A DNA stretch of 33,000 nucleotides from contig OZ176054.1 in NCBI GenBank assembly GCA_964247055.1, positions 2,201,001 to 2,234,000 on the forward strand, read 5' to 3'. The notes below the pieces were generated by a model. That model saw nothing but the letters and a program-made list of their open reading frames with translations. It was not told the DNA's origin and searched no databases. Made by a program: the position numbers and the translations under genes. Origin of the DNA: Paragordius varius (taxonomy: Eukaryota > Animalia > Nematomorpha). Positions 4,201-21,900 of this stretch are shown in pieces (the first letter of the stretch is position 1; the number at the start of each line of letters is the position of its first letter).

Positions 4201-7200
4201 TAAACCATTGTCAAAGGACCATTTTTTTATAAAAAGTTATTTGTTTAAACTTATTAAAAATCTTATTTTTTTTATTAATTTTCAGTTTACATACCCACAA
4301 CTTATTTTCGGAGCTAAAATGATCAAAAAATCTCAAAATTCAAAATATAAGCAAATAATTTTATATAAACGTTTATTATTTTAATGAAAATTATTTAAAT
4401 AACTTATTTTACCCGTAAAATTTTGCTAAAAAATCTTATATATCATACCTTATGAGAGTCTAGTGAAACACTAGTAACGCCAGGAACTGATAAAAATTTA
4501 TTCCAAACCACATTATAGTGGTTAATATTTTCTCCTTGTTTGAAATCATTAAATTCTTCAAAGGAATTTAAATCTTTCATATCTAATAACGGAATTAAAA
4601 ATCCACCTAAACAACTATCAATGTGTAATGGTATGGACAAGGATTCACAAATCTAAAAATAAGTTAAATAAAAAATCTAAAAATAAATAAAATGTATCTC
4701 AAAATAAAATAAAATAATTATTAATATAAAGTAATTTATTTAAAAATAATATTAATTTAGATAAAATTAAATTTTTTAAAAAATTATAAAAAAAATACTT
4801 TAGCAATGTGTGGAATGGGCTCACAAATACCATGAGGATAGCCAGGTGCCGATGCAACAATCTATATTTTTGAAAAATATTTATTTAAATGTAAAAAAAT
4901 AATATTTTTTAGAAAAATTAAGGCAAACATAAGTTAAGGCCTAAGTCATTTTTTAGAAAATTACTTTGTTTTTTGTTACAACTTATGATTTTGGATAGAA
5001 ATTAACTATAAAATGGAAATATAAACAATTTTATATTTGACAATTCAAAATATTACCGAATTTAAAAATATGCATTCTTTAGTCTTTTAAGCGCATTTTA
5101 CAAAAAAAATTTTTAAGGCATGAAAAATTTAATAAAAATTCTCATCTCAAACTTTTTTGTCGCCATTTTTTACCATAAAATTTTTTTTAAATCGCTAATG
5201 CAACAGGCAATAAATCTTTATTTCGGTTAAAAAATGTAAAAAATTAACTTTTTACAGCTTTCAGGCTTAATTTTACCAGAAAAAAACTTGTTACATTTTC
5301 ATATATCAGCTCATTAGTATTTTGAAGGTATCTCAATTTTAAACTCTAGAAGTCGCAAAAATAGAAATACAGGCTTTTTTTATCTAATATATACAATGTT
5401 TGATAATTAAATTTTTTAACAAAAATAACATTTAGAACTGTAGCTCTTACAAAACTGAAGTCTGGGATTAAAAACAACCCCAAATAAACAAGGACAAAAA
5501 AGGAAGATAATGAATTGTTAAAATTAAAAATACTTAAAGGTAAATATATATATTAAATTATCATAACTTACACAAATCGTATTTTTCGTTATATATTGAT
5601 AAAGTATTTCTGGATCATACGTAAATGTGTTTTGATTAACAGGGATTGATATAATTTTTATGCCAAAATATTCACCGGCCTAAATATATATTATACAAAT
5701 TTAAAAACTTAATCAAAATATATAACAAAAATTGTATAAAAATTAAAAAAAATATTTATATCTACCTTTAAAAAGGCGGCATGAGCAGTTTCTGCAATTA
5801 TTCTAAAGAATTATTTAAAAATAAGAAATTTTGGGGAAAATATTAACAATAATATTATTAAAAAATTTAAATGTAATATTTCGATAAAATATTAAAATTG
5901 AGAGAATTACGCATTGTATTTATGAAATTTATTAAAAAAAAATAAGCTGAAATGCGTACAAATATAAAAAAATATATATTTTAATTTTCGACTTTTATAG
6001 TAACGGATCGGTGATGAAAATACAAAACAATAATAATTTATTAAGGATTTCGTGATATTTATACTTTTTCCGTACCCGGTCGCCATCCTCTTGATGATGT
6101 CTCGTCCATTGAGATTTAAAGGACGCATACCATACCTTCAAATTCCCGTGGGGATGTGGAAAGTAAAAAATATTTAGTTATTACTACCCCGATGGGATAT
6201 TTCCAATCCAATTTAATCGCCTCCTACCATTTGGATTGATGGTTTCTCCCATGCTTTTCCAGAGAATAATGGATTAGGTACTCAAAGATTGCAGGGGCAC
6301 AATGGCTTATCTCGATGATGTTTTGATTTTGTTGGTAAAACGAAAGATGAACACGATAAAAATCTGAGCGAGACCTCTTAACAAAGTTACAAAAATGCGG
6401 GTTTACACTAAGAAAAGATAAATTAAAACTGTATCAGAAGAATATGAAATTTTTGGGGTTTGAGTTATCAAAACAGGGAATTCGCCCTGCTGTACAAGAT
6501 AAGCTCGACGCCATTGCTAAATGTGTGCAACACCCACCAATAAAACTGAGTTAAGATCATTTTTGGGATTGCTCAATTTTTATGAACGTTTTATTCCTGG
6601 TTTACATGTCAAAGTTAGTAATCTACATGCCAAGCCAAAATTAATTCGTCTTCGTGCAGCTGTTGGGATAACCAACCGATGACCAACATATACGAAACCA
6701 TGGGCTTGTTTGAGATCATTTCTAACGGATTTGAATGCGGATAATTCCGGTGTTGACCAATCATTATTTTTAAGTGCCATACGTAGTCGTTTTAACAGTA
6801 GTTTATCCTCCAAACAATCTTTTGTTTTTTGCGTTTTATTTTGAAATTTAAATCCATGAATGCGATTTTTCGGATTTTTTCGGCCACATATTCATCATCA
6901 TTGTCTACGGATGTCTGACTCTTTTCGGGAAGTCTTGAAAACACATCGGTTGGCCATGTTTGTTGATCCCGCAATATATTTCATAATATCAAAATCATAC
7001 GCGAAGGCCTTGTAGAGATCCATCTTAACAATTTACAGTTTTTAATATACCACTTAAAACTTCCAATTGTTTCCGAATAAATGAACCAACGGTTTATGAT
7101 CTGATCTGACCAGACCTCACATTTCTGTCCATAAATATAAAATGATGGAATTTTTCTAAACGCAAATAAAAAAAGATTGTTTGGAGGATAAACTACTGTT

Positions 7201-10072
7201 AAAACGACTAGGTATGGCACTTAAAAATAATGATTGATTGGTCAACACCGGAATTATCCGCATTCAAACTCGTTAGAAATGATCTCAAACAAGCCGATGG
7301 TTTCGTATATGTTGGTGTGATCGGTTAATTATCCCAACAGCTGCACGAAGACTAATTTTGGCTTGGTTTCATGTTGGACATCCCCGGGTATTGTTGCTAT
7401 GAAAAACACAGCCAGGTCGGTGGTGTTTTGGCCCAGAATGGATAAGGACATTGAAAAGTTAGTACACGAGTGTCAGTGTTGTCAGAGGAACAGGGCGAAC
7501 GTTGCTGAGAATCCGGTATATAAATGGTGGAACTTCAATGTGGGAATATGGGAAAGAGTCCATGTGGACATCGCGGGTCCCATGTGTGGTAAATATTGGT
7601 TGGTTTTAATTGACGCGTTCTCAAGATGGGTGGACAGGTGGAGATACTTAGCAGTATTACATCTGATGTGATTTTGAAACAATTTGAGAAATGGTTTTCC
7701 AAGAATGCTAGTATCTGATAATGTGCTACTTATTTCAAATCGTTCAATTTTCGGGATAAGATGACAAACTGGAACATTAAGCATGTGACGTCGGCTCCCT
7801 ACCCCACCCAAGGACAAATGGTTTGGTAGAAAGAATAATTTATACGTTGAAATCGAGATTCCGTTCCACGATGATGCCTGGCGTGAAGAGTCAGGAGGCT
7901 TTAAACAATGTTTTATTGGCCTATCGTAATTCATGTGGCATAACGAGATTAAGAAACGACCCCTGCATCGTTGTTTTTGAAGAGAAACATCAACACACCG
8001 TTGAATTGGTGTTGCAAGATAAAGAAACGCCTAAAGAAAGAAAGTACACCACCGAGGAGACCCTTAAGAGATTTTTAGAGGATGAAGTGAATGATATGTA
8101 GTTGATATTATCTACAACATTGCATCACATTGTATTTTTATCTTACATCATATTATTATATTAATCGCATCTGGCGTTTATGTTTGTGCGTCTCATTATT
8201 CGTGAAATTCTTATATATATATATATATTCGTAGAGTAAAAGACATATTCTTACAATTGTGACGCACATGCATGTTAAAATTGTCATTAATTAAAAAGTA
8301 TAAATATCACGAATTCCTTAAAAATTATTATTGTTTTGTATTTTCATCACCGAGATCCGTTGCTATAAAGTCGAAAATTAAAATATATATTTTTTATATT
8401 TGTACGCATTTCAGCTTAATTTTTTTAATAAATTTCTATAAAATAATATTTACATTTCAGGCAAAATGATATTTTTGTATTTTCGCCCATAATTTCTGTA
8501 GGCCAAACACGCTAATAATATGCTTTCTGTTCCACCTGTTGTAACCTGGTATAGTGAGCATATTAATAAAAAATAAGATTTGGTTTAAATATAATTTAAC
8601 TTAAAATACTCACTCGAATTAAATTTTTTGATAAAATTTTATATGAAAAAAATTTTTTAAAACAATAAAAAAAACATAAATATCAAATTTGAACGGGGTA
8701 GGCGTTTTAAAAATTTTAATTTTCTTTAAACTAAAATTCAAGTATTTTTTTAATTTTGTTATAATGGGTGAATAAAAAGTAAAATTTTTCAAAATTTATA
8801 TTAAAATAACGTAAAGTTTTTAAAAATTATATTATTATACATATAAATAATAATTTAAATAATTGTAAATTTTATAAAATGGAAGCGAAATCAAGTTTAT
8901 TTGACTTTATTAAACAATGCAACTAGAAATTAAAAACCGGAACCAAAAACGATAAAGAATCTAATCAGCATACTAAAACTCAAACATTATTTTTTTTAAA
9001 AAAATTCAATTTTCCTTAAAATAAAAATTTAAAAAATATTTCAACTTACACATCCACAATAATTCAAATTTCCTGAGCATATTTTTTCTTGAAAATTTTC
9101 AGACATTTTGGCATTGCTGTGAGTTAACATTCCAATCGCAAAACGTATAATATCGCATTCCATGACCATTACACTTGCATAAAGGTCTGGGTGTAATGGA
9201 TTTGCATATGCAAATATTTTGAAAATCTAAATATGCGGAATGGAATATCCTTTATAATTACTTGAAAACCATTTTGAATTATAAAATTTTGAAAATTTAC
9301 CCAAAATAAGATTTAAAGGGTATATCGAAAAATGACGAAAATATATTTACTATAGTCCAAATCATAAAAAAGTATATGTATTGATATTTTAGTCTTTATA
9401 ATATTTAAAATGAGTGTATAAGCGTTAAATTATATACATCTATATTTAACTAAACAATAATTTTTAATTTATAGATATAAAATTTAATATTTTTAACAAT
9501 TTAGATAATAGGACTATTCATACCAATTTGATATTATTATGCATATAAAAATATTTAACTAAGTTATTTTAAATATATTTATAATATAAATAATAACCAT
9601 TAAAAAATTAAAACCTCTGATTGCAAAGATCTAAGTTCTTCATTAGGGATTATATAGCAAGAGCCCGAAATTTTCCCAGATTCCAAGCATTCACGATTAT
9701 CTAAAATTACAAAAATAAATTATCTAAAATACCCGAAGCTTTATAATTTGTGGCCATTGCCAATATATCAGACTTAAGTTTATAAAATATATGTTACCTT
9801 TAAACGTGATTTATCAAATTTTTCAACCAAATTTTGAGAGTCAAATGATTTGTACAAACTTTTTCGTATATCTTGTTTTGCGCTACAAAGTTGTGTGTCA
9901 ACTTTTTTAGACAATATAGGTGCTTTTATTAAGAAATCCATAGCTTTTCGCTTAATGTAAGTACCTTAATTATATTTAAAAGTTTACCCTGTTTATAAAT
10001 TTTCAGAAATATAAAAGTTAACATGCCATACATGAAGGCATAACCAATTTGTGTCAATAAAACTTTCAACAT
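1294..10072 (-). CDS. SGPL1: Sphingosine-1-phosphate lyase (PLP-dependent), 15 exons, 589 aa
   Basis: Exons 10072-9988, 9964-9798, 9772-9733, 9700-9615, 9226-9050, 8545-8454, 5802-5766, 5679-5572, 4861-4799, 4652-4449, 4018-3898, 3647-3530, 2814-2590, 2345-2198, 1392-1294; all GT-AG and phase-consistent (1770 nt). Motifs: N-terminal hydrophobic segment, YANPLHPD, VTTGGTESILLAC, AHAAFLK, LHIDSCLGGF, SLDSHK|YGYCPKG (PLP lysine), GSRSG, GWNLNLLQNP, AALYGFSQ. Start codon uncertain (possible upstream ATG at 10138). Confidence 0.95.
2132..2147. repeat. C16 homopolymer (G16 on the transcribed strand) in the last SGPL1 intron
   Basis: Direct count of 16 consecutive C, about 50 nt inside the intron donor at 2197. 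Confidence 0.95.
2932..3180. mobile_element. Degenerate copy of the TATACCATTT-terminus MITE family, in an SGPL1 intron
   Basis: Carries the family's subterminal repeats (ataccctcgaacaatcaaaattc; atttatttttagggtaaatttg) and a decayed right end gtaaatgataca followed by (TA)10; left terminus eroded. Confidence 0.6.
5924..6069. repeat. Left arm of ~145-bp inverted repeat (partner 8293-8436)
   Basis: Reverse complement aligns to 8293-8436 with about 8 differences by hand alignment; the ORF track shows the shared peptide NYYCFVFSSP on opposite strands. Confidence 0.95.
6630..7366. repeat. Internal ~205-bp inverted duplication inside the gypsy remnant (arms about 6630-6835 and 7157-7366)
   Basis: Both arms encode the RNase H-integrase linker (STPELSAFK.VRNDLKQA.GFVYVG) on opposite strands; roughly 90% identical by eye, with small indels. 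Confidence 0.9.
8097..8255 (+). repeat. Possible 3' LTR of the gypsy remnant
   Basis: TGTA...TTACA boundaries after a purine-rich tract (tagaggatgaag) downstream of the integrase; no 5' LTR is present to compare. Confidence 0.35.
8293..8436. repeat. Right arm of ~145-bp inverted repeat (partner 5924-6069)
   Basis: See left arm; lies 17 nt inside the SGPL1 intron donor at 8453. Confidence 0.95.
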
Positions 10073-10182: not shown

Positions 10183-15211
<5,029 letters not shown>

Positions 15212-15635: not shown

Positions 15636-17278
15636 TTAAGCCTTTTGCCCCGATTTGCATGATGTGCATTTCTCTTTATTCACGCATGTTCCACCTTTTA
15701 AGAAAATAATATAGTAGCAATTGAAATTATATGGACAAAACGTAAAAAATCAAAAGACAACTAACTATATTTTAAAAAACTTTAATTTTTTGAATATAAT
15801 ATAACCTCTTATTTTGGGTAGTATAAAAAAATAATACTTAAAATGATTTCAGATTTAATAATATATTTGACATGTGTCATGATTAGGCAGTATAGAAAAT
15901 AATATAGATTTTAATTGGATAACTCAAAATCTATATTATTTGGCATTTAGATTTAAGGTTAATCTTGATAATTTTAATTTTTTCTAAATAATAAAATTGG
16001 TCCAAAAAATTTTTAAATAAAATATAATTTTAAAATCACTTACAAGTACTGCAATTTGCACAGGGTTCTCCTGGAGGGCATTTATCATGGCATTTGGTAC
16101 AGCACTAAAATATGCCAGATGTAAAAATTTTAATATAAATTTACTTAATTTAAAAAACATTTTTAATTAATTTTAAGTATTCTTTTAATGATAATTAAAT
16201 TAATAAATTTGATTTAATATTTATTGAAATAAGTAAAAAGCATAAATTCTATATACCAAATATTAAAAATATGCGTTTGAATTTTTAAAAATTAAATAAT
16301 AAAAAATAAATACTTTACAACAGCCTTTGCTACAACCGTGACATTGTTTATCGTGATGACCTAGTATTAAAAATAAAAATTTTAAAATTAAATTAAAGAT
16401 TGTATAGAATATTTTATTTCATTAAATAAAATTCTTGTATATAAGAAAAAACAAGGATTACCACAGTTTTAATAAAATAATAACTTAAATCATGGCTTTA
16501 AAATTTTGGCAATTCAATTTAATCAAAAGTTTGCTCTGAAGGACACGGATTTTAGCGTAATGAATGTTTTATTAAATAATTATTATTCAAAAGTGCATAT
16601 GATTACAACTATTCTTTACTCAAATATTATAAAAAGATCTATTTATGGGTACATGTTAAAGGTGATTACGTCTCAAGTTTAAGCTTCAATGAATAAATAT
16701 ATGATATGCAAAAGGCGGAAAATAGAAAAACAATCACTTTTCAACTTATGAGCAAAAAGATACCATAAGTATTAAATTCGGAAAAAATCCATGTAATTTA
16801 GTCAAAAAAACATTAATTAAGTTTAATAAACAACAATCATATAAAGTTATTTATATTTATCAGGTCTAATGTTCAATCGATGGGTTAAAAAAGCGCCCCC
16901 GGAAAATTAATTTGCCACATCCTGCGTTAACCGAATGACCTAAAACAAAAACCGTTGCGGTTTGAAATAAAATCACAGATCGAAGAAATTTTAAGCATTA
17001 ATCAAAAAATGATTAAATCAAAATTTAACAAGCAGGCTCCAATTGACCGTAATTATGTAGAAATATATTTAGTCAATTCGTTTAAAATGAAGAAAATACT
17101 TACATGAAACGCATTTTTCTCCATCAGCAGTCTTGCAACACTATATTCAATTCATTTAAAAATTAATTTAATGGAAATAATTGTAAAAAATTTAAATCCA
17201 TATATATATTTTTATAATTCGTACTTTACAACAATCTTTTGGGCAACTGCATTGGGCGCAATTTTTGTGTTCTTCCAT
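15636..17278 (-). CDS. Metallothionein-like Cys/His-rich protein, 93 aa with six exons (85 aa if the micro-exon is skipped)
   Basis: Exons 17278-17225, 17140-17104, 16939-16916 (GC donor), 16360-16314, 16104-16044, 15694-15636 give MEEHKNCAQCSCPKDCCKCCKTADGEKCVSCHSVNAGCGHHDKQCHGCSKGCCKCCTKCHDKCPPGEPCANCSTCGTCVNKEKCTSCKSGQKA*: 24 Cys, 6 His, no aromatic residue, CxC/CxxC/CC motifs; splice phases consistent. Metal binding is inferred from composition only. Confidence 0.8.
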
Positions 17279-18913
17279 TTTTTGGCAAATTGGTGTAAAA
17301 TATAAATAAAAATTGAGAGAGATAAATATAAATTTTTAAATGTGAAAATATGATTACTCACTTTTATATAATGATAAATAAAAACTATTGTCTACCAAAA
17401 AATCAATACACAAAGCGTTGTAACAAGATAACAATGTACGATACAATTTAAAGGGTATATGATTTTGCATTTTTTTAATATTGTAAAATTTTGACGTTTT
17501 TACTGATATTAAACTATAGTTTTAGTTTAAAATGAATTAAATTGTAAGATACCCTATTCTGAGGTATTTTTATAGTGGTTAATCGAAAATTATTTAAATT
17601 CAAATGATTGCCAATTCAATATGAAACAATTCCAATATATAATAAAGTGGCTACAAATTACTTTTGATATATATATATAAAGTTGAATTTAAAACACAAT
17701 CAAATAACTTTATTACCTTTTATGGATAGACATATAATATATATACATATAATAAATAATTTTTTTTACAGAAAAAATATATCTATCATCTCAGTTATTT
17801 ATTGGAATTTCCATTCCGAAAACTATTATTTATTTTTTGGGTGCCATTTTGGCTTTTGAAGCTTTCGGTATAAAACTTTCTATTAAAACTGAGTCGACTG
17901 TATCGAGTGTTTGCATTGAAATTATATATGAAAAAACTATACACCTCTCCCGTTTTTTTGCAAAATTTGAAAAATATTATTATATATTGGGCATAAATCA
18001 TTATTTAAACGTCAAAGGTAGCAAATAAATATCCAAATTATTTCTCATTTTAAATCTATGGGTAAACATTAAGGTATTACCAAAAAAACTTAATTTACTG
18101 AAATAGAATTGATTATTGGTGCGTAAACGCAGAAACTTTGGCTTGAAGGTCTAACGGCGAGAGATATATCTTTTATTTAATTACTACTAACTTATACAAA
18201 GGTTTTTTCTTCCATACTACATAATTTATATATAATAGAAAAACTTAGCTTTGAGACAATTTTTCGGAAGAGTATGTGCCCTTCAGAATCATTAATTTTT
18301 ATTTTGATGCACTGAATAAAGTCGGCCACACTTCATTAAATTAGCCGGTTTTTGCCGTTCTCCCGATAAAATGACATTTTTCGAAAAAAAATATTAAGTT
18401 CCAAAAAATATTTTTTACAAAGATCAGTCCAAGTTAAGCGACAAATCATTGTTTTAGGTATTCCAGTGTTAAGATAAAAATTTTAATCTAAACCTTTTTT
18501 AATTAGCTGTTAGGCAGGGTTCCACTATCTATAAAATGCTTCAACAGATAATATTAACGTGGCTTTGAAATTATTTTTCGCTTATGTTAAAAACCATATG
18601 AATTATCAATTAACAGTTTATTTATTTATAGTTAAGAAGCAAAAATTCTCTGTGTGTTTTTGTCTTTATGCTAAATCCCCTGACATATAGAAACAACGTG
18701 GCTTGAAAATAATCTTGGGTAATTTAAGATATCATATGGATTGAATTTCAACCATATCCTTATAAAAACAAAAGTACGTTTTTTAAATAAAATAATTCTG
18801 GGTAGAGCACAGCTATGGTAAATATGCCACCATTATAACGGCTAACATAGATTTTTGCCAAAGAATTTTTTATAATCTTTAAAATATGTTTGCTAAAAGA
18901 ACTTTTTCTTTAA

Positions 18914-21900
18914 TTATACATAATTTATTAAGTTTGTTGAAATAAATATGAATAAAAGAATATATTGTGATGCATTGGGAATGCTTATAGGCGCATATTT
19001 TTCATTAAGGCTTGAAACTCGAATAATGTGATATTCAAACCAAAACCCCAAAAATATCATTGCAATTTTTAGCGAAATCGAAATTAAAATTCGATGTTTT
19101 TGCATTATATTATGTACAGGTTTACTTAAATAATTTTGCGAAAATACAATAATTATAATAGATAAAATAATAGGTGAGACAGGCAACTTTATAAATTTTG
19201 TAAAAAAATATGAAAAATTTTGTGGTCTAAAATGAGTATTCTTGATAATATCTTGATACCCTCTTAATTTGAGATTCATAGAAAAGAATGTGATATATGT
19301 TTCATACATGACAGGAATATCATAAATCATTAAAGTTAACAAAATGAATTGAAATATAAATAATTTAATTACAGCATTATTTTGTCTAAACTTAAATTTT
19401 TGTGAAATCAATATTATAAAAATCCATGCCAGGCTTGGATATGTATTGAGCAATATAAGTATCGTGATATAATTTACAAATTCAAAAAAATATCTTGCTT
19501 TTGTACCATTAATATTTTTTGAGAACTTTTTAAGCAAAAAAATTCTGAAGTTTAAATAAGATGCAAAATAATTAAAACCAAGTACCATTGTATAACTTAC
19601 AACTGTAATAAAAATTATAAAACAAGATGCTATGCATAAACATAATAATATATTTATCATTCCATCTTCATAATTTGAGACAAATAACTGATGTGAGATA
19701 TATATAGGGATTATTATAAAAAAATTTAGCAAATAATTCTTAAATTTTGGAAATATAAAATTAATAAAATTGGGCCATAAAAATAGGAAAATGAAGAAAA
19801 ATATAATACGTACAGCCATTAAATAAATTAAATATTTGTGTAATAAAACAATTTGTCGACCAGCAACCACATAATTAAATTTAATCGAGATGAACTGTTT
19901 AACCACAAAATTGTCATTTGATTCAGGATTCAAAATAATGGTGAGATATGGATTTACTATAAAATTATCGTTGGTAATTTCATTTTGATTTTTTGGCATA
20001 TTATCCATTGGATCGTTTATAAAATTTAAGGCATACGTATTGTAATGTGCCAATGTACGCTGTAAAAACAGCGTAAATTTACAGTTAAACATTGGATTAG
20101 GCATAGTTTTGGATTCTAATTCTACTTCTTGACAAAAATGCAAAGGTTGAAAGAACCGTGTCTCCATTTCTAAATATTCGGTAAACGCTTCCAGATTTTT
20201 ATTGGTTTCTTTGCTGTAAAACGCTATTTTTGGTTCAATCGTAAACATTATTTGTATCTAAAAACAGAAAATTTAATAAATAAATTATAAGAAAAACGGT
20301 TAAAAATATTTTAAAAATAATTACCTGCTGAAAGATTTCATTCAAAGTTTTCAAGTCCGAAGACGTATTAGAAACGCTAATTTGCAGATCAAAATCATAA
20401 GCTTGCCAAATATGTTGCATTATGGAAGTAAGTTTAATTCGGATTATCGGTTCTGACAATGATGAAAAGTCGAACTTATTCTATCATATATAGTGAATTG
20501 ATATAATATTTTTTATCAAAAAGTTGTGTATATTATTAAAACAAAACTTAAAATATATACATTGCCATTGCTATGGTGATATATATTTTCTGTGGAATTC
20601 ATCAATAAAATTTGTGGAATAGTAAAATATTTAGGGTTAAATATGGAGCTTAAATTAATCATGATATTCGCTAAAGCACTGCTATTAATTTGAAGGTGCG
20701 TGGTTCCATTGCATTCTGAGGTAAAAACTTGGTGTTTAAAATCTTTAGAGTCAATAATCACGCGTAAAAGATAACGGATTTTATATGGTTTTTTCGATAT
20801 ATCATCATCTCTAAGTAAATTGTCTCTTGGGTTTTTTGTGTCAAATTTGTGTCGCAAATTAAAGGGTAATCGTCGTAAAGATGTCATTAAAATACCAGAT
20901 AAATCAGTGATGTTATTATGATATTGACTGTTATTTTTTGAAATCAATATTTTTGCGATTTCTTGATGTAGATTATCCAAAAACGGTTCGAAATTAATAA
21001 ATCGCTCATAGTTGACAGAATACGGTTGATTTACCAAAACGGTGAAATAAATGTTATAATCATTCTTTGATATTCCATCATCCACACATGATTTGGAAAT
21101 TTTAATAAGGAATTGATTAGGGCTTAAGGGGTAAAATATATTTTTTGTGCTGTCAATAGTTGAATTTGGAATATTTATTGGGACCTGCTTCTCAAAATAT
21201 ATCGGATTTACACGAATCCAAAAGCTACGAAAATATGCATTTTCAAGTTTCAACATTTGAGAATGGATTGCTAAATTCTTACCATTTTTATAAGAAAGTC
21301 CCATTTTAACATCAATGTAACGTGTTAGCAATCGAACCAATTCATTACACCACACGATACTCAAGTGATCATTAGGAACCCAAACTTCTGGAATATTGTT
21401 AGTTGAAACTGTCAAAGAGCTTCTACTAACAACATTTCCTTTCAGAACAGAATTTTTTGAGCTATATGCAAGAGGAACTTGAAAGTCCCCAGGCCCACCT
21501 GTGATATGTATCTCTGTCAAAGTACAGGGTTTTTGGTGATTCATATGTATGGATTTATCATGTGTAGAATATGCCGTGTAAAACGCATAAAAATTGGGAT
21601 CCCACCATAAAACTAAACATATTACATATTGTATATAATTAAAAAATATATTTAAATCAAATTGAAAATTGAACAATTTATTAAACCAAAACCAAACTAT
21701 TAAATACTAAACGCTCAAAAACGGTTTAATAAATATAGTATGGATAGAAGTAGTTTTTTGAAAGGGTGTTTGCATGTTTAAGCCTTATTACAATAAAATC
21801 AATTTGCAATCAATCACATACATCTTATGAAATAAAAAAATATTAAACGGACTTTGAAATAAAAATTAAAACTATAACTTTTAGATATGATATAAAATAT

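What the first reader, a model, noticed from the sequence alone, without database searches (positions are those of the whole stretch)
15636..17278. Hidden metallothionein-like gene built from a fused tandem duplication of a three-exon module
No exon exceeds 61 nt, so the ORF track misses it. The 93-aa product has 24 Cys, 6 His, no aromatics and an unusual CCKCC cluster twice. Exon structure repeats: exons 1 and 4 end CCK| in phase 0 (HKNCAQCSCPKDCCK vs DKQCHGCSKGCCK); exons 2 and 5 start CC and end in phase 1 inside a Cys codon; exons 3 and 6 complete that Cys and share VN...C. I found no ATG that could start the second half with this frame, so it reads as one two-domain gene. The Cys spacing matches no metallothionein family I can name, so it may be a new type. 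Metal binding is inference from composition.
Basis: partly seen in the sequence, partly recalled or inferred. Interest (0 to 1): 0.8.

Follow-up and report, generated by a model that had tools for sequence, protein, structure and literature searches.

The report
Two-module metallothionein-like gene in hairworm
A small gene made of five or six tiny exons, sitting in an apparently empty gap of a very AT-rich genome that most likely belongs to a horsehair worm, encodes a 92-residue protein that is one quarter cysteine and looks like a two-domain metal-binding metallothionein; metal binding and splicing are still unproven.

Summary
On the minus strand, 17278-15636, six exons of 21-61 nt with GT..AG borders join into one 279-nt frame. 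The product has 92 residues (not 93), 24 Cys, 6 His, 14 Lys and no aromatic residues, and carries CC-K-CC twice. Exon GC is 39-48%; intron GC is 11-26%. Four of the eight Cys-dense open segments in the 33-kb window lie here, in order on one strand.

Two junction pairs repeat. Introns 1 and 4 split CCK|CC in phase 0, with 16 of 18 bases shared across the junction. Introns 2 and 5 split a Cys codon (T|GT) after CxxC. Exons 4-6 have no Met and no possible start, so the second half must be read from exon 1.

Exon 3 (21 nt) is the weak point. Its donor GTGGCA is atypical, and skipping it keeps the frame (85 aa).

The genome (110.6 Mb, TTAGGG telomeres) is closest to Gordionus (Nematomorpha). I found no paralogue, no Pfam or PDB match exon by exon, and no report of nematomorph metallothioneins. 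The joined protein was not searched, by rule.

Verdict: a real, probably single-copy, two-module metallothionein-like gene, and a new variant of a known kind. Metal binding, expression and family novelty remain untested.

The parts
17361..17370 (-). TATA-like box (TATATAAAAG), 83-92 nt upstream of the ATG. It fits a promoter but is weak evidence in DNA this AT-rich.
   Evidence: Read directly. No MRE (TGCRCNC) cluster upstream.
17225..17278 (-). Exon 1 (54 nt). The ATG sits in an A-rich context (aaaaaATGg). Encodes 18 aa ending CCK; donor GTACGA, phase 0.
   Evidence: junction repeat D5.
17104..17140 (-). Exon 2 (37 nt). Starts with CC and ends in a split Cys codon T|GT; acceptor ..atatag, donor GTAAGT, phase 1.
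16919..16939 (-). Exon 3, a 21-nt microexon with a strong acceptor (tttttgttttag) and an atypical donor (GTGGCA). It is optional for the frame: exon 2 to exon 4 is also in frame.
   Evidence: donor comparison.
16861..16960 (-). GC-rich patch (42-47% GC) that runs about 60 nt past the exon-3 donor. Reading on from exon 3 reaches TAG at 16868-16866. It may be a remnant, or an alternative use, of the first module's old terminal exon.
   Evidence: No Rfam match and no stable fold.
16361..16918 (-). Intron 3 (558 nt, the longest). Proposed to be the former 3' end, spacer and 5' end between two tandem gene copies.
   Evidence: Inference. No significant similarity to the promoter region of exon 1.
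16314..16360 (-). Exon 4 (47 nt). Counterpart of exon 1 without an ATG; ends CCK; donor GTATTT, phase 0.
16044..16104 (-). Exon 5 (61 nt). Counterpart of exon 2, 8 aa longer with 3 extra Cys. Starts with CC and ends T|GT; donor GTAAGT. Single copy in the genome.
15636..15694 (-). Exon 6 (59 nt). Completes the Cys codon, adds 18 aa with 3 more Cys, and ends with stop TAA at 15638-15636. An AATAAA lies 116 nt downstream (15520).
15696..15805 (.). Copy of a dispersed repeat of about 100 bp inside intron 5. It is not part of the coding gene but explains part of the intron's length.
   Evidence: 51 matches in G000; all but the query's own locus are copies of this repeat, 70-91% identity; no inverted partner in this intron.

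Best explanation
This is one real, single-copy, protein-coding gene on the minus strand. It lies between an aminotransferase gene and a PGAP1-like gene in the genome of a probable horsehair worm (Nematomorpha). Five or six micro-exons are spliced into a basic cytosolic protein of 85-92 aa and about 9.7 kDa. The protein has no signal peptide and no hydrophobic core. A quarter of its residues are Cys, arranged as CC, CxC and CxxC.

The most likely function is that of a metallothionein. The thiolates, possibly with four Cys-adjacent His, would wrap Zn(II), Cd(II) or Cu(I) ions into two metal-thiolate clusters: an N-terminal module with 9-10 Cys and a C-terminal module with 14 Cys. The protein would buffer or detoxify metals.

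The gene most likely arose when a three-exon metallothionein gene was duplicated in tandem and the two copies fused. A donor inside the old terminal exon and an acceptor at the old start codon turned the stop, the spacer and the second ATG into the 558-nt intron 3.

Shown: the frame, the splice motifs, the composition, the repeated junctions, and the second half's dependence on exon 1. Inferred: transcription, inclusion of exon 3, metal binding and the fusion route.
For: - Frame and borders. Few frame-keeping alternative junctions exist, and the model uses the most consensus-like ones.
- Exon GC is 39-48% against 11-26% in introns, which argues for constraint in a genome under AT pressure.
- Cys-dense segments cluster here (P about 7e-5).
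- Published working criteria for candidate metallothioneins are all met (PMC13168519): Cys 20-30% in CC/CxC motifs, few aromatic residues, and a short N-terminal stretch. Here these are 26% Cys, CC x4, CxC x3, 0 aromatic residues, and 6 residues before the first Cys.
- Three coding exons is the usual metallothionein gene plan (PMC4101491), and it matches each module.
- Duplication: an 18-nt junction repeat covering K-(D/G)-C-C-K|GTA (D5); identical intron phases and sites; the halves align with a score of 78 against 55.8 +/- 7.8 for shuffles.
- One gene: no Met or start is available for exons 4-6.
- Nothing else occupies the 3.9-kb gap: no ORF of 70 aa or more and no RNA family.
Against: - There is no transcript evidence and no orthologue. 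The only comparative route open to me was the 10-kb flanks of the Gordionus PGAP1 gene, and they show no Cys-rich exons.
- No metallothionein Pfam family matches any exon or any place in the genome. This test is insensitive for 7-20-aa exons.
- There is no cluster of metal-response elements. C. elegans metallothionein genes lack them too (PMC4101491).
- The exon-3 donor is atypical.
- The similarity of exon 3 to exon 6 is not significant.
- Six His and 92 residues are at the high end for animal metallothioneins.
Confidence: 0.6

Rival explanations
1. The locus gives two products, or a different main product. Exon 3 would be a terminal exon that reads on to the TAG at 16868-16866, giving a 54-aa, 10-Cys single-module protein with a hydrophobic tail. 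The long form would then skip exon 3 (85 aa, 23 Cys). On this reading the 92-aa six-exon protein is rare or absent.
For: - Exon 3 has the best acceptor of the gene, but its donor (GTGGCA) is unlike 10 other donors in this genome, all GTA.. or GTT...
- The GC-rich patch continues about 60 nt beyond that donor.
- An ATTAAA lies about 40 nt after the TAG.
- The exon 2 to exon 4 junction keeps the frame.
Against: - The read-on tail contains Leu, Ile, Arg and 3 Phe, residues absent from the rest of the protein.
- ATTAAA/AATAAA occurs about once per 100 nt here by composition alone.
- The 21-nt exon is exactly in frame and metallothionein-like in composition.
Confidence: 0.18
2. The gene is real, but the protein is not a metallothionein. 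It would be another kind of small Cys- and Lys-rich protein, such as a zinc-cluster regulatory module, a redox or structural protein, or a sperm or nuclear basic protein.
For: - No metallothionein family model matches.
- The only hint from sequences of solved structures is exon 5 against the Zn2Cys6 cluster of yeast PUT3 (E 0.076).
- The product has pI 8.3 and 15% Lys.
Against: - The PUT3 match is not significant and covers 19 residues.
- There are no aromatic or aliphatic core residues to build a fold without metal, no signal peptide, and no Arg.
- At 26% Cys in CC, CxC and CxxC, the composition fits the working definition of metallothioneins (PMC13168519).
Confidence: 0.15
3. The reading is not a functional gene. 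It would be a decaying relic, or a chance chain of short open segments picked out by eye.
For: No transcript, orthologue or paralogue was found. Exons this short give a reader much freedom.
Against: - Cys-dense segments cluster on one strand and in order (P about 7e-5).
- Every junction has GT..AG in the required phase.
- Exon GC is about double intron GC despite AT pressure.
- All 24 Cys codons are intact although the two halves have diverged almost completely at the DNA level.
Confidence: 0.07

Closest known systems
Nematode metallothioneins (family 6, Pfam PF05522; C. elegans CeMT-1 with 75 aa, 19 Cys and 4 His, and CeMT-2 with 63 aa)
   Same: Nematodes are the sister phylum. These are small, Cys-rich and aromatic-poor proteins, His contributes to coordination, and the promoters lack MREs (PMC4101491).
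   Different: PF05522 has no match anywhere in this genome in six frames, these exons included. This product is longer (92 aa, 24 Cys, 6 His), and it has a repeated CC-K-CC signature split by introns. Homology was not tested with the joined protein.
Modular or bidomain animal metallothioneins built by internal or tandem duplication (mollusc, tunicate and Oikopleura metallothioneins; Tetrahymena; chelicerate bidomain metallothioneins)
   Same: They follow the same evolutionary logic. Cys-motif modules are duplicated and joined into larger metallothioneins, and most animal metallothioneins have two domains that bind about 3-4 divalent ions each (PMC7826182, PMC8476144, PMC8283569, PMC1808422, listed; PMC13168519).
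   Different: Here the duplication unit is visible as a whole three-exon gene plan with conserved intron sites and phases. The Cys pattern is Cx2CxCx3CCxCCx7Cx2C followed by a 14-Cys module, and it differs from the chelicerate domain patterns quoted in PMC13168519, the only ones I could read.
Chelicerate type-2 metallothionein, domain D2a (CCx5CCx4CCx6C(C/H))
   Same: It is rich in CC doublets and has a conserved His next to the Cys set (PMC13168519).
   Different: The spacing differs: doublets here are one residue apart (CC-K-CC). There is no evidence of common descent.
Fungal Zn2Cys6 binuclear cluster (PUT3, PDB 1zme/1ajy)
   Same: Exon 5 aligns over 19 residues, with four Cys columns and a P-G-x-P-C stretch. 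Both are two-metal thiolate clusters.
   Different: E is 0.076 on 20 residues, which is not significant. There is no DNA-binding linker or dimerisation region, and the full six-Cys spacing is not kept. I treat this as a chance resemblance.

Membership tests
Metallothionein (operational superfamily definition) | Low molecular weight (roughly under 10 kDa) | tested here: met
   92 aa, 9.7 kDa (85 aa, 9.1 kDa without exon 3).
Metallothionein (operational superfamily definition) | Cys content of about 20-30%, arranged in CC, CxC or CCC motifs | tested here: met
   24 Cys = 26%; CC x4, CxC x3, CxxC x8, no CCC. Criterion from PMC13168519.
Metallothionein (operational superfamily definition) | Few or no aromatic residues; short N-terminal stretch before the first Cys | tested here: met
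   0 Phe/Tyr/Trp; 6 residues before the first Cys.
Metallothionein (operational superfamily definition) | Binds d10 metal ions in metal-thiolate clusters | not testable with these tools
   Needs recombinant protein with ICP and ESI-MS, or native purification.
Metallothionein (operational superfamily definition) | Expressed, and usually metal-inducible | not testable with these tools
   No transcript data could be reached. There is no MRE cluster, which is not decisive (PMC4101491).
Nematode metallothionein family 6 (PF05522) | Match to the family profile above its cut-off | tested here: inconclusive
   No six-frame match in the whole genome at E up to 10, and no Pfam hit for exon pieces. The exons are only 7-20 aa, and the joined protein was not scanned, by rule.
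Vertebrate/mollusc/crustacean-type metallothionein (PF00131) and dipteran metallothionein (PF02067) | Match to the family profile above its cut-off | tested here: inconclusive
   No six-frame match in the genome. The same sensitivity limit applies.
Fungal Zn2Cys6 binuclear cluster | Cx2Cx6Cx5-12Cx2Cx6-8C spacing with a significant sequence match | tested here: not met
   Only E 0.076 over 19 residues of exon 5. The spacing in exon 5 is Cx2Cx3Cx5Cx2C.

The most novel reading that the evidence does not exclude
This would be the first metallothionein of the phylum Nematomorpha and a lineage-specific type, marked by a CC-K-CC signature split by a phase-0 intron. It would have been created by fusion of two tandem three-exon metallothionein genes. 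The old stop, the intergenic spacer, the second promoter and the second ATG would have become intron 3, and a 21-nt microexon would have been carved out of the old terminal exon. That would make it an unusually legible case of gene fusion by intronisation.
Probability: 0.4. Interest if true: 0.55.

Novelty: new variant of a known kind. Interest (0 to 1): 0.42.

Why it matters
Metallothioneins are so heterogeneous that their evolution is still called a 'black hole' (PMC8476144). According to PMC13168519, they have been characterised mostly in chordates and molluscs. I found no paper on a nematomorph metallothionein.

A candidate from a horsehair worm would fill a phylum-level gap next to the nematodes.

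Its exon plan also preserves the duplication unit: a whole three-exon gene repeated, with intron sites and phases kept. That makes the route from tandem gene copies to a two-domain protein directly testable by comparing nematomorph genomes.

On the practical side, it shows that genes made only of exons of 61 nt or less escape ORF-based scans.

Tried and rejected
**Left out by rule**
- I made no search, fold or look-up with the joined (spliced) protein. All database work was done exon by exon and by reference.
- The joined sequence was built only inside scripts, for counting residues and comparing its own two halves.
- The contig is not human-like (21-30% GC, invertebrate genes), so that rule did not apply.

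**Searches that gave nothing**
- Pfam on exon 5 and on 20-aa pieces around exons 1, 4 and 6 gave nothing at E up to 10.
- PDB sequences gave only PUT3 at E 0.076 for exon 5, and nothing for exon 1.
- Pfam metallothionein families PF02067, PF05522 and PF00131 gave no six-frame match in the whole genome.

**Paralogues**
- A DNA search of the locus found only an intronic repeat.
- An exon-5 protein search found only itself.
- A junction pattern found the two known sites plus one chance hit on contig C1, in a Tyr/Phe-containing context with no Cys-rich neighbours.

**Regulation and structure**
- MRE motifs are not enriched: 6 in the window against 5.5 expected, and none upstream of the gene.
- The GC-rich patch after exon 3 has no Rfam match and no fold better than shuffles (z +1.27).
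- Its similarity to the end of exon 6 (GGCAAA..TTAATTTT) is not significant (299 of 1000 shuffles).
- The promoter of exon 1 against intron 3 is not significant either (91 of 1000).

**Synteny**
- Its best hit is the Gordionus protein.
- The Gordionus locus with 10-kb flanks holds no Cys-rich exons, so it gives no comparative support either way.

**Identifying the organism**
- Arthropod cuticle domain: none found.
- Nematode cuticle-collagen domain: none found.
- TTAGG telomere repeat: absent.
- An Hsp70 piece was too conserved to place the genome.
- The 444-aa PGAP1 tail had no hits.
- The protein atlas was uninformative on taxon.
- Exact look-ups of window ORFs were not on record.

**Earlier findings**
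- The search of earlier findings never opened.

Full report
**What is there**

The window is very AT-rich: 21-30% GC per kilobase, apart from a retroelement remnant at 36-40%. It carries intron-split animal genes.

| Exon | Coordinates (minus strand) | Length |
|---|---|---|
| 1 | 17278-17225 | 54 nt |
| 2 | 17140-17104 | 37 nt |
| 3 | 16939-16919 | 21 nt |
| 4 | 16360-16314 | 47 nt |
| 5 | 16104-16044 | 61 nt |
| 6 | 15694-15636 | 59 nt |

- The five introns measure 84, 164, 558, 209 and 349 nt. All begin GT and end AG, with phases 0, 1, 1, 0, 1.
- The exons sum to 279 nt, which is 92 residues plus TAA.
- The product has 24 Cys (26%), 14 Lys and 6 His, and no Phe, Tyr, Trp, Leu, Ile or Arg. 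It weighs 9.7 kDa and has pI 8.3. Its motifs are CC x4, CxC x3, CxxC x8 and four Cys-His pairs.
- The ATG sits in an A-rich context, and a TATA-like box lies 83-92 nt upstream. Both fit a start site, but both are weak evidence in such AT-rich DNA.

**Is it more than chance?**

- Across all six frames of the 33-kb window, only eight stop-free segments contain four or more Cys within 15 residues. Four of them are these exons, on one strand and in order. With 0.21 expected in this stretch, Poisson P is about 7e-5.
- Exon GC is 39-48% and intron GC is 11-26%. That is the pattern expected of constrained coding sequence in a genome under strong AT pressure.
- I enumerated every GT..AG pair within 30 nt of each junction that keeps the frame. 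Only one to four options exist per junction. The model uses the most consensus-like option at four of the five junctions; the exception is the exon 3-4 junction discussed below.
- Nothing else occupies this 3.9-kb gap. There is no ORF of 70 aa or more, no tRNA and no Rfam family, even at a permissive threshold.

**One gene or two?**

- The second half (exons 4-6) contains no Met codon.
- There is no in-frame ATG upstream of exon 4 before stop codons.
- Intron 3 holds no ATG...GT mini-exon that could feed exon 4 in phase 1.
- Exons 4-6 keep 14 Cys codons intact, clean splice motifs and raised GC. Meanwhile they have diverged almost completely from exons 1-3 at the DNA level.
- They therefore look constrained, and they can only be translated from the ATG of exon 1. 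This supports a single two-module gene.

**The weak point is exon 3**

- Its acceptor is the best in the gene. Its donor, GTGGCA, differs from the ten other donors I read in this genome: four in this gene, two in PGAP1 and four in two Hsp70 genes. All of those start GTA or GTT.
- Skipping exon 3 keeps the frame and gives 85 aa with 23 Cys.
- Reading on from exon 3 gives a 54-aa protein with an un-metallothionein-like tail and a TAG at 16868-16866.
- A GC-rich patch (16960-16861) runs about 60 nt past the exon-3 donor. It is not a known RNA and does not fold better than shuffled sequence.
- I read the patch as a remnant of the old terminal exon of the first copy, or as a terminal exon that is still used. 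Only transcript data can decide.

**Internal duplication**

- Introns 1 and 4 both lie in phase 0 between CCK and CC. An 18-nt stretch across that junction is shared at 16 of 18 positions (family D5). It covers K-(D/G)-C-C-K plus the first three intron bases.
- Exons 2 and 5 both start with CC and both end with C-x-x-C, with the last Cys codon split T|GT in phase 1. Exon 5 is 8 residues longer and has three extra Cys.
- The two protein halves align with a score of 78, against 55.8 +/- 7.8 for composition-matched shuffles. Only 17 of 2000 shuffles reach that score.
- Exon 3 against exon 6 is not significant at the DNA level. The similarity of the region after exon 3 to the end of exon 6 is not significant either.
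- So the module repeat is well supported for the first two exons of each module and only suggestive for the third.
- Three coding exons is the usual metallothionein gene plan (PMC4101491). The simplest history is a tandem duplication of a three-exon gene followed by fusion, with the old stop, spacer, promoter and second ATG becoming the 558-nt intron 3. That route is inference.

**Whose genome?**

- G000 is 110.6 Mb in 44 contigs, and the window is C5:2201001-2234000.
- It has TTAGGG telomere arrays at contig ends and no TTAGG arrays.
- It has nuclear-receptor DNA-binding domains, so it is an animal.
- It has no arthropod R&R cuticle domain and no nematode cuticle-collagen N-domain.
- An intronless 1009-aa E78-like nuclear receptor from contig C3 has its best match in Gordionus sp. 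m RMFG-2023, at 60% identity over 99% of the queried region. The next matches are near 40%, and the named ones are mostly arthropods.
- The window's PGAP1 piece also has its best hit, among 1.84 billion representatives, in a Gordionus protein.
- Gordionus DNA is about 27% GC (27.6% in locus L016).
- The genome is therefore most likely a nematomorph, though not a close relative of Gordionus.

**Neighbours and copy number**

- Gene order: a class I/II aminotransferase on the plus strand (exon at 14155-14337) converges on the 3' end of the candidate. The candidate lies 1.6 kb downstream of a PGAP1-like gene on the same strand. A Pur-alpha gene lies further on.
- The candidate is single copy. The DNA search found only an intronic repeat. 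The exon-5 protein search found only itself. A degenerate junction pattern found the two known junctions and one chance site.

**Comparison with known families**

- Exon pieces hit no Pfam family.
- Pfam metallothionein models for Diptera, nematodes and the vertebrate/mollusc/crustacean type match nowhere in the genome in six frames. With exons of 7-20 residues these tests are insensitive, so family membership stays open.
- Against PDB sequences, exon 5 weakly resembles the Zn2Cys6 cluster of PUT3 (E 0.076). I treat this as chance.
- By the working criteria used in current metallothionein surveys, the product qualifies as a candidate metallothionein (PMC13168519). Those criteria are 20-30% Cys in CC/CxC motifs, few aromatic residues, and a short N-terminal stretch.
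- His-containing metallothioneins are known in the sister phylum, and C. elegans metallothionein genes lack MREs (PMC4101491). The absence of MREs here therefore does not argue against this reading.
- Multi-module metallothioneins built by duplication are well documented in molluscs, tunicates, ciliates and chelicerates (papers listed and read). The architecture is a new variant, not a new principle.
- I found no paper on nematomorph metallothioneins.

**Comparative test that failed to inform**

The Gordionus PGAP1 locus with 10-kb flanks (L016) contains no Cys-dense exons. Gordionus has a genome about 2.6 times larger and is only distantly related, so this neither supports nor refutes the gene.

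**Verdict**

- I put about 0.8 on a real spliced gene of roughly this structure.
- I put about 0.6 on the full statement: one gene, two homologous modules, and metallothionein function.
- Interest is moderate. It is a likely first metallothionein candidate for a neglected phylum, with an unusually legible duplication-and-fusion exon plan. It lacks transcript, orthologue and metal-binding evidence.

Noticed in passing
window 5907-8469: Degraded Ty3/gypsy-like retroelement. Broken plus-strand ORFs carry reverse-transcriptase/RNase H-like and integrase (HHCC zinc finger and DDE-like) motifs, at 36-40% GC. It is flanked by similar segments at 5907-6128 and 8272-8469 that translate to near-identical peptides and look like LTRs. 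Observed only.
   Followed up: partly
window 15696-15805 (intron 5); e.g. G000:C4:4192383-4192819, C9:63528-63779: Dispersed repeat of about 100 bp. One search returned 51 matches in the genome, and all but the query's own locus are copies of it, at 70-91% identity. Elsewhere the copies often occur as inverted pairs 160-300 bp apart, which looks like the terminal inverted repeats of a MITE. Intron 5 holds a single arm only.
   Followed up: partly
G000:C1:64-922 and genome-wide: Long TTAGGG arrays (about 10,000 overlapping 30-mer matches), including one at the very start of contig C1, and no TTAGG arrays. If the genome is a nematomorph, this ecdysozoan keeps the ancestral animal telomere repeat rather than the arthropod one. 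The nematode repeat TTAGGC was not tested.
   Followed up: partly
L014:2750-5779 (G000:C3, minus strand): Intronless 1009-aa E78-like nuclear receptor, with a 500-residue N-terminal region before the DNA-binding domain. It is 60% identical to a Gordionus protein and about 40% identical to arthropod E78.
   Followed up: partly
window 16861-16960: GC-rich patch (42-47% GC) spanning exon 3 and about 60 nt of intron 3, including CCGGGGGCGC. It has no RNA family match and no stable fold. It may be a remnant of an older terminal exon or a regulatory element.
   Followed up: partly
window 16045-16104 (exon 5): Weak resemblance (E 0.076) of the exon-5 peptide to the fungal Zn2Cys6 binuclear cluster of PUT3. 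Probably chance, but both are two-metal thiolate clusters.
   Followed up: yes
window 10800-15000 (+) and 18914-21676 (-): The flanking genes are a class I/II aminotransferase and a PGAP1-like GPI inositol-deacylase. The two PGAP1 introns I read are about 70 nt each, much shorter than those of the metallothionein-like gene (84-558 nt).
   Followed up: partly
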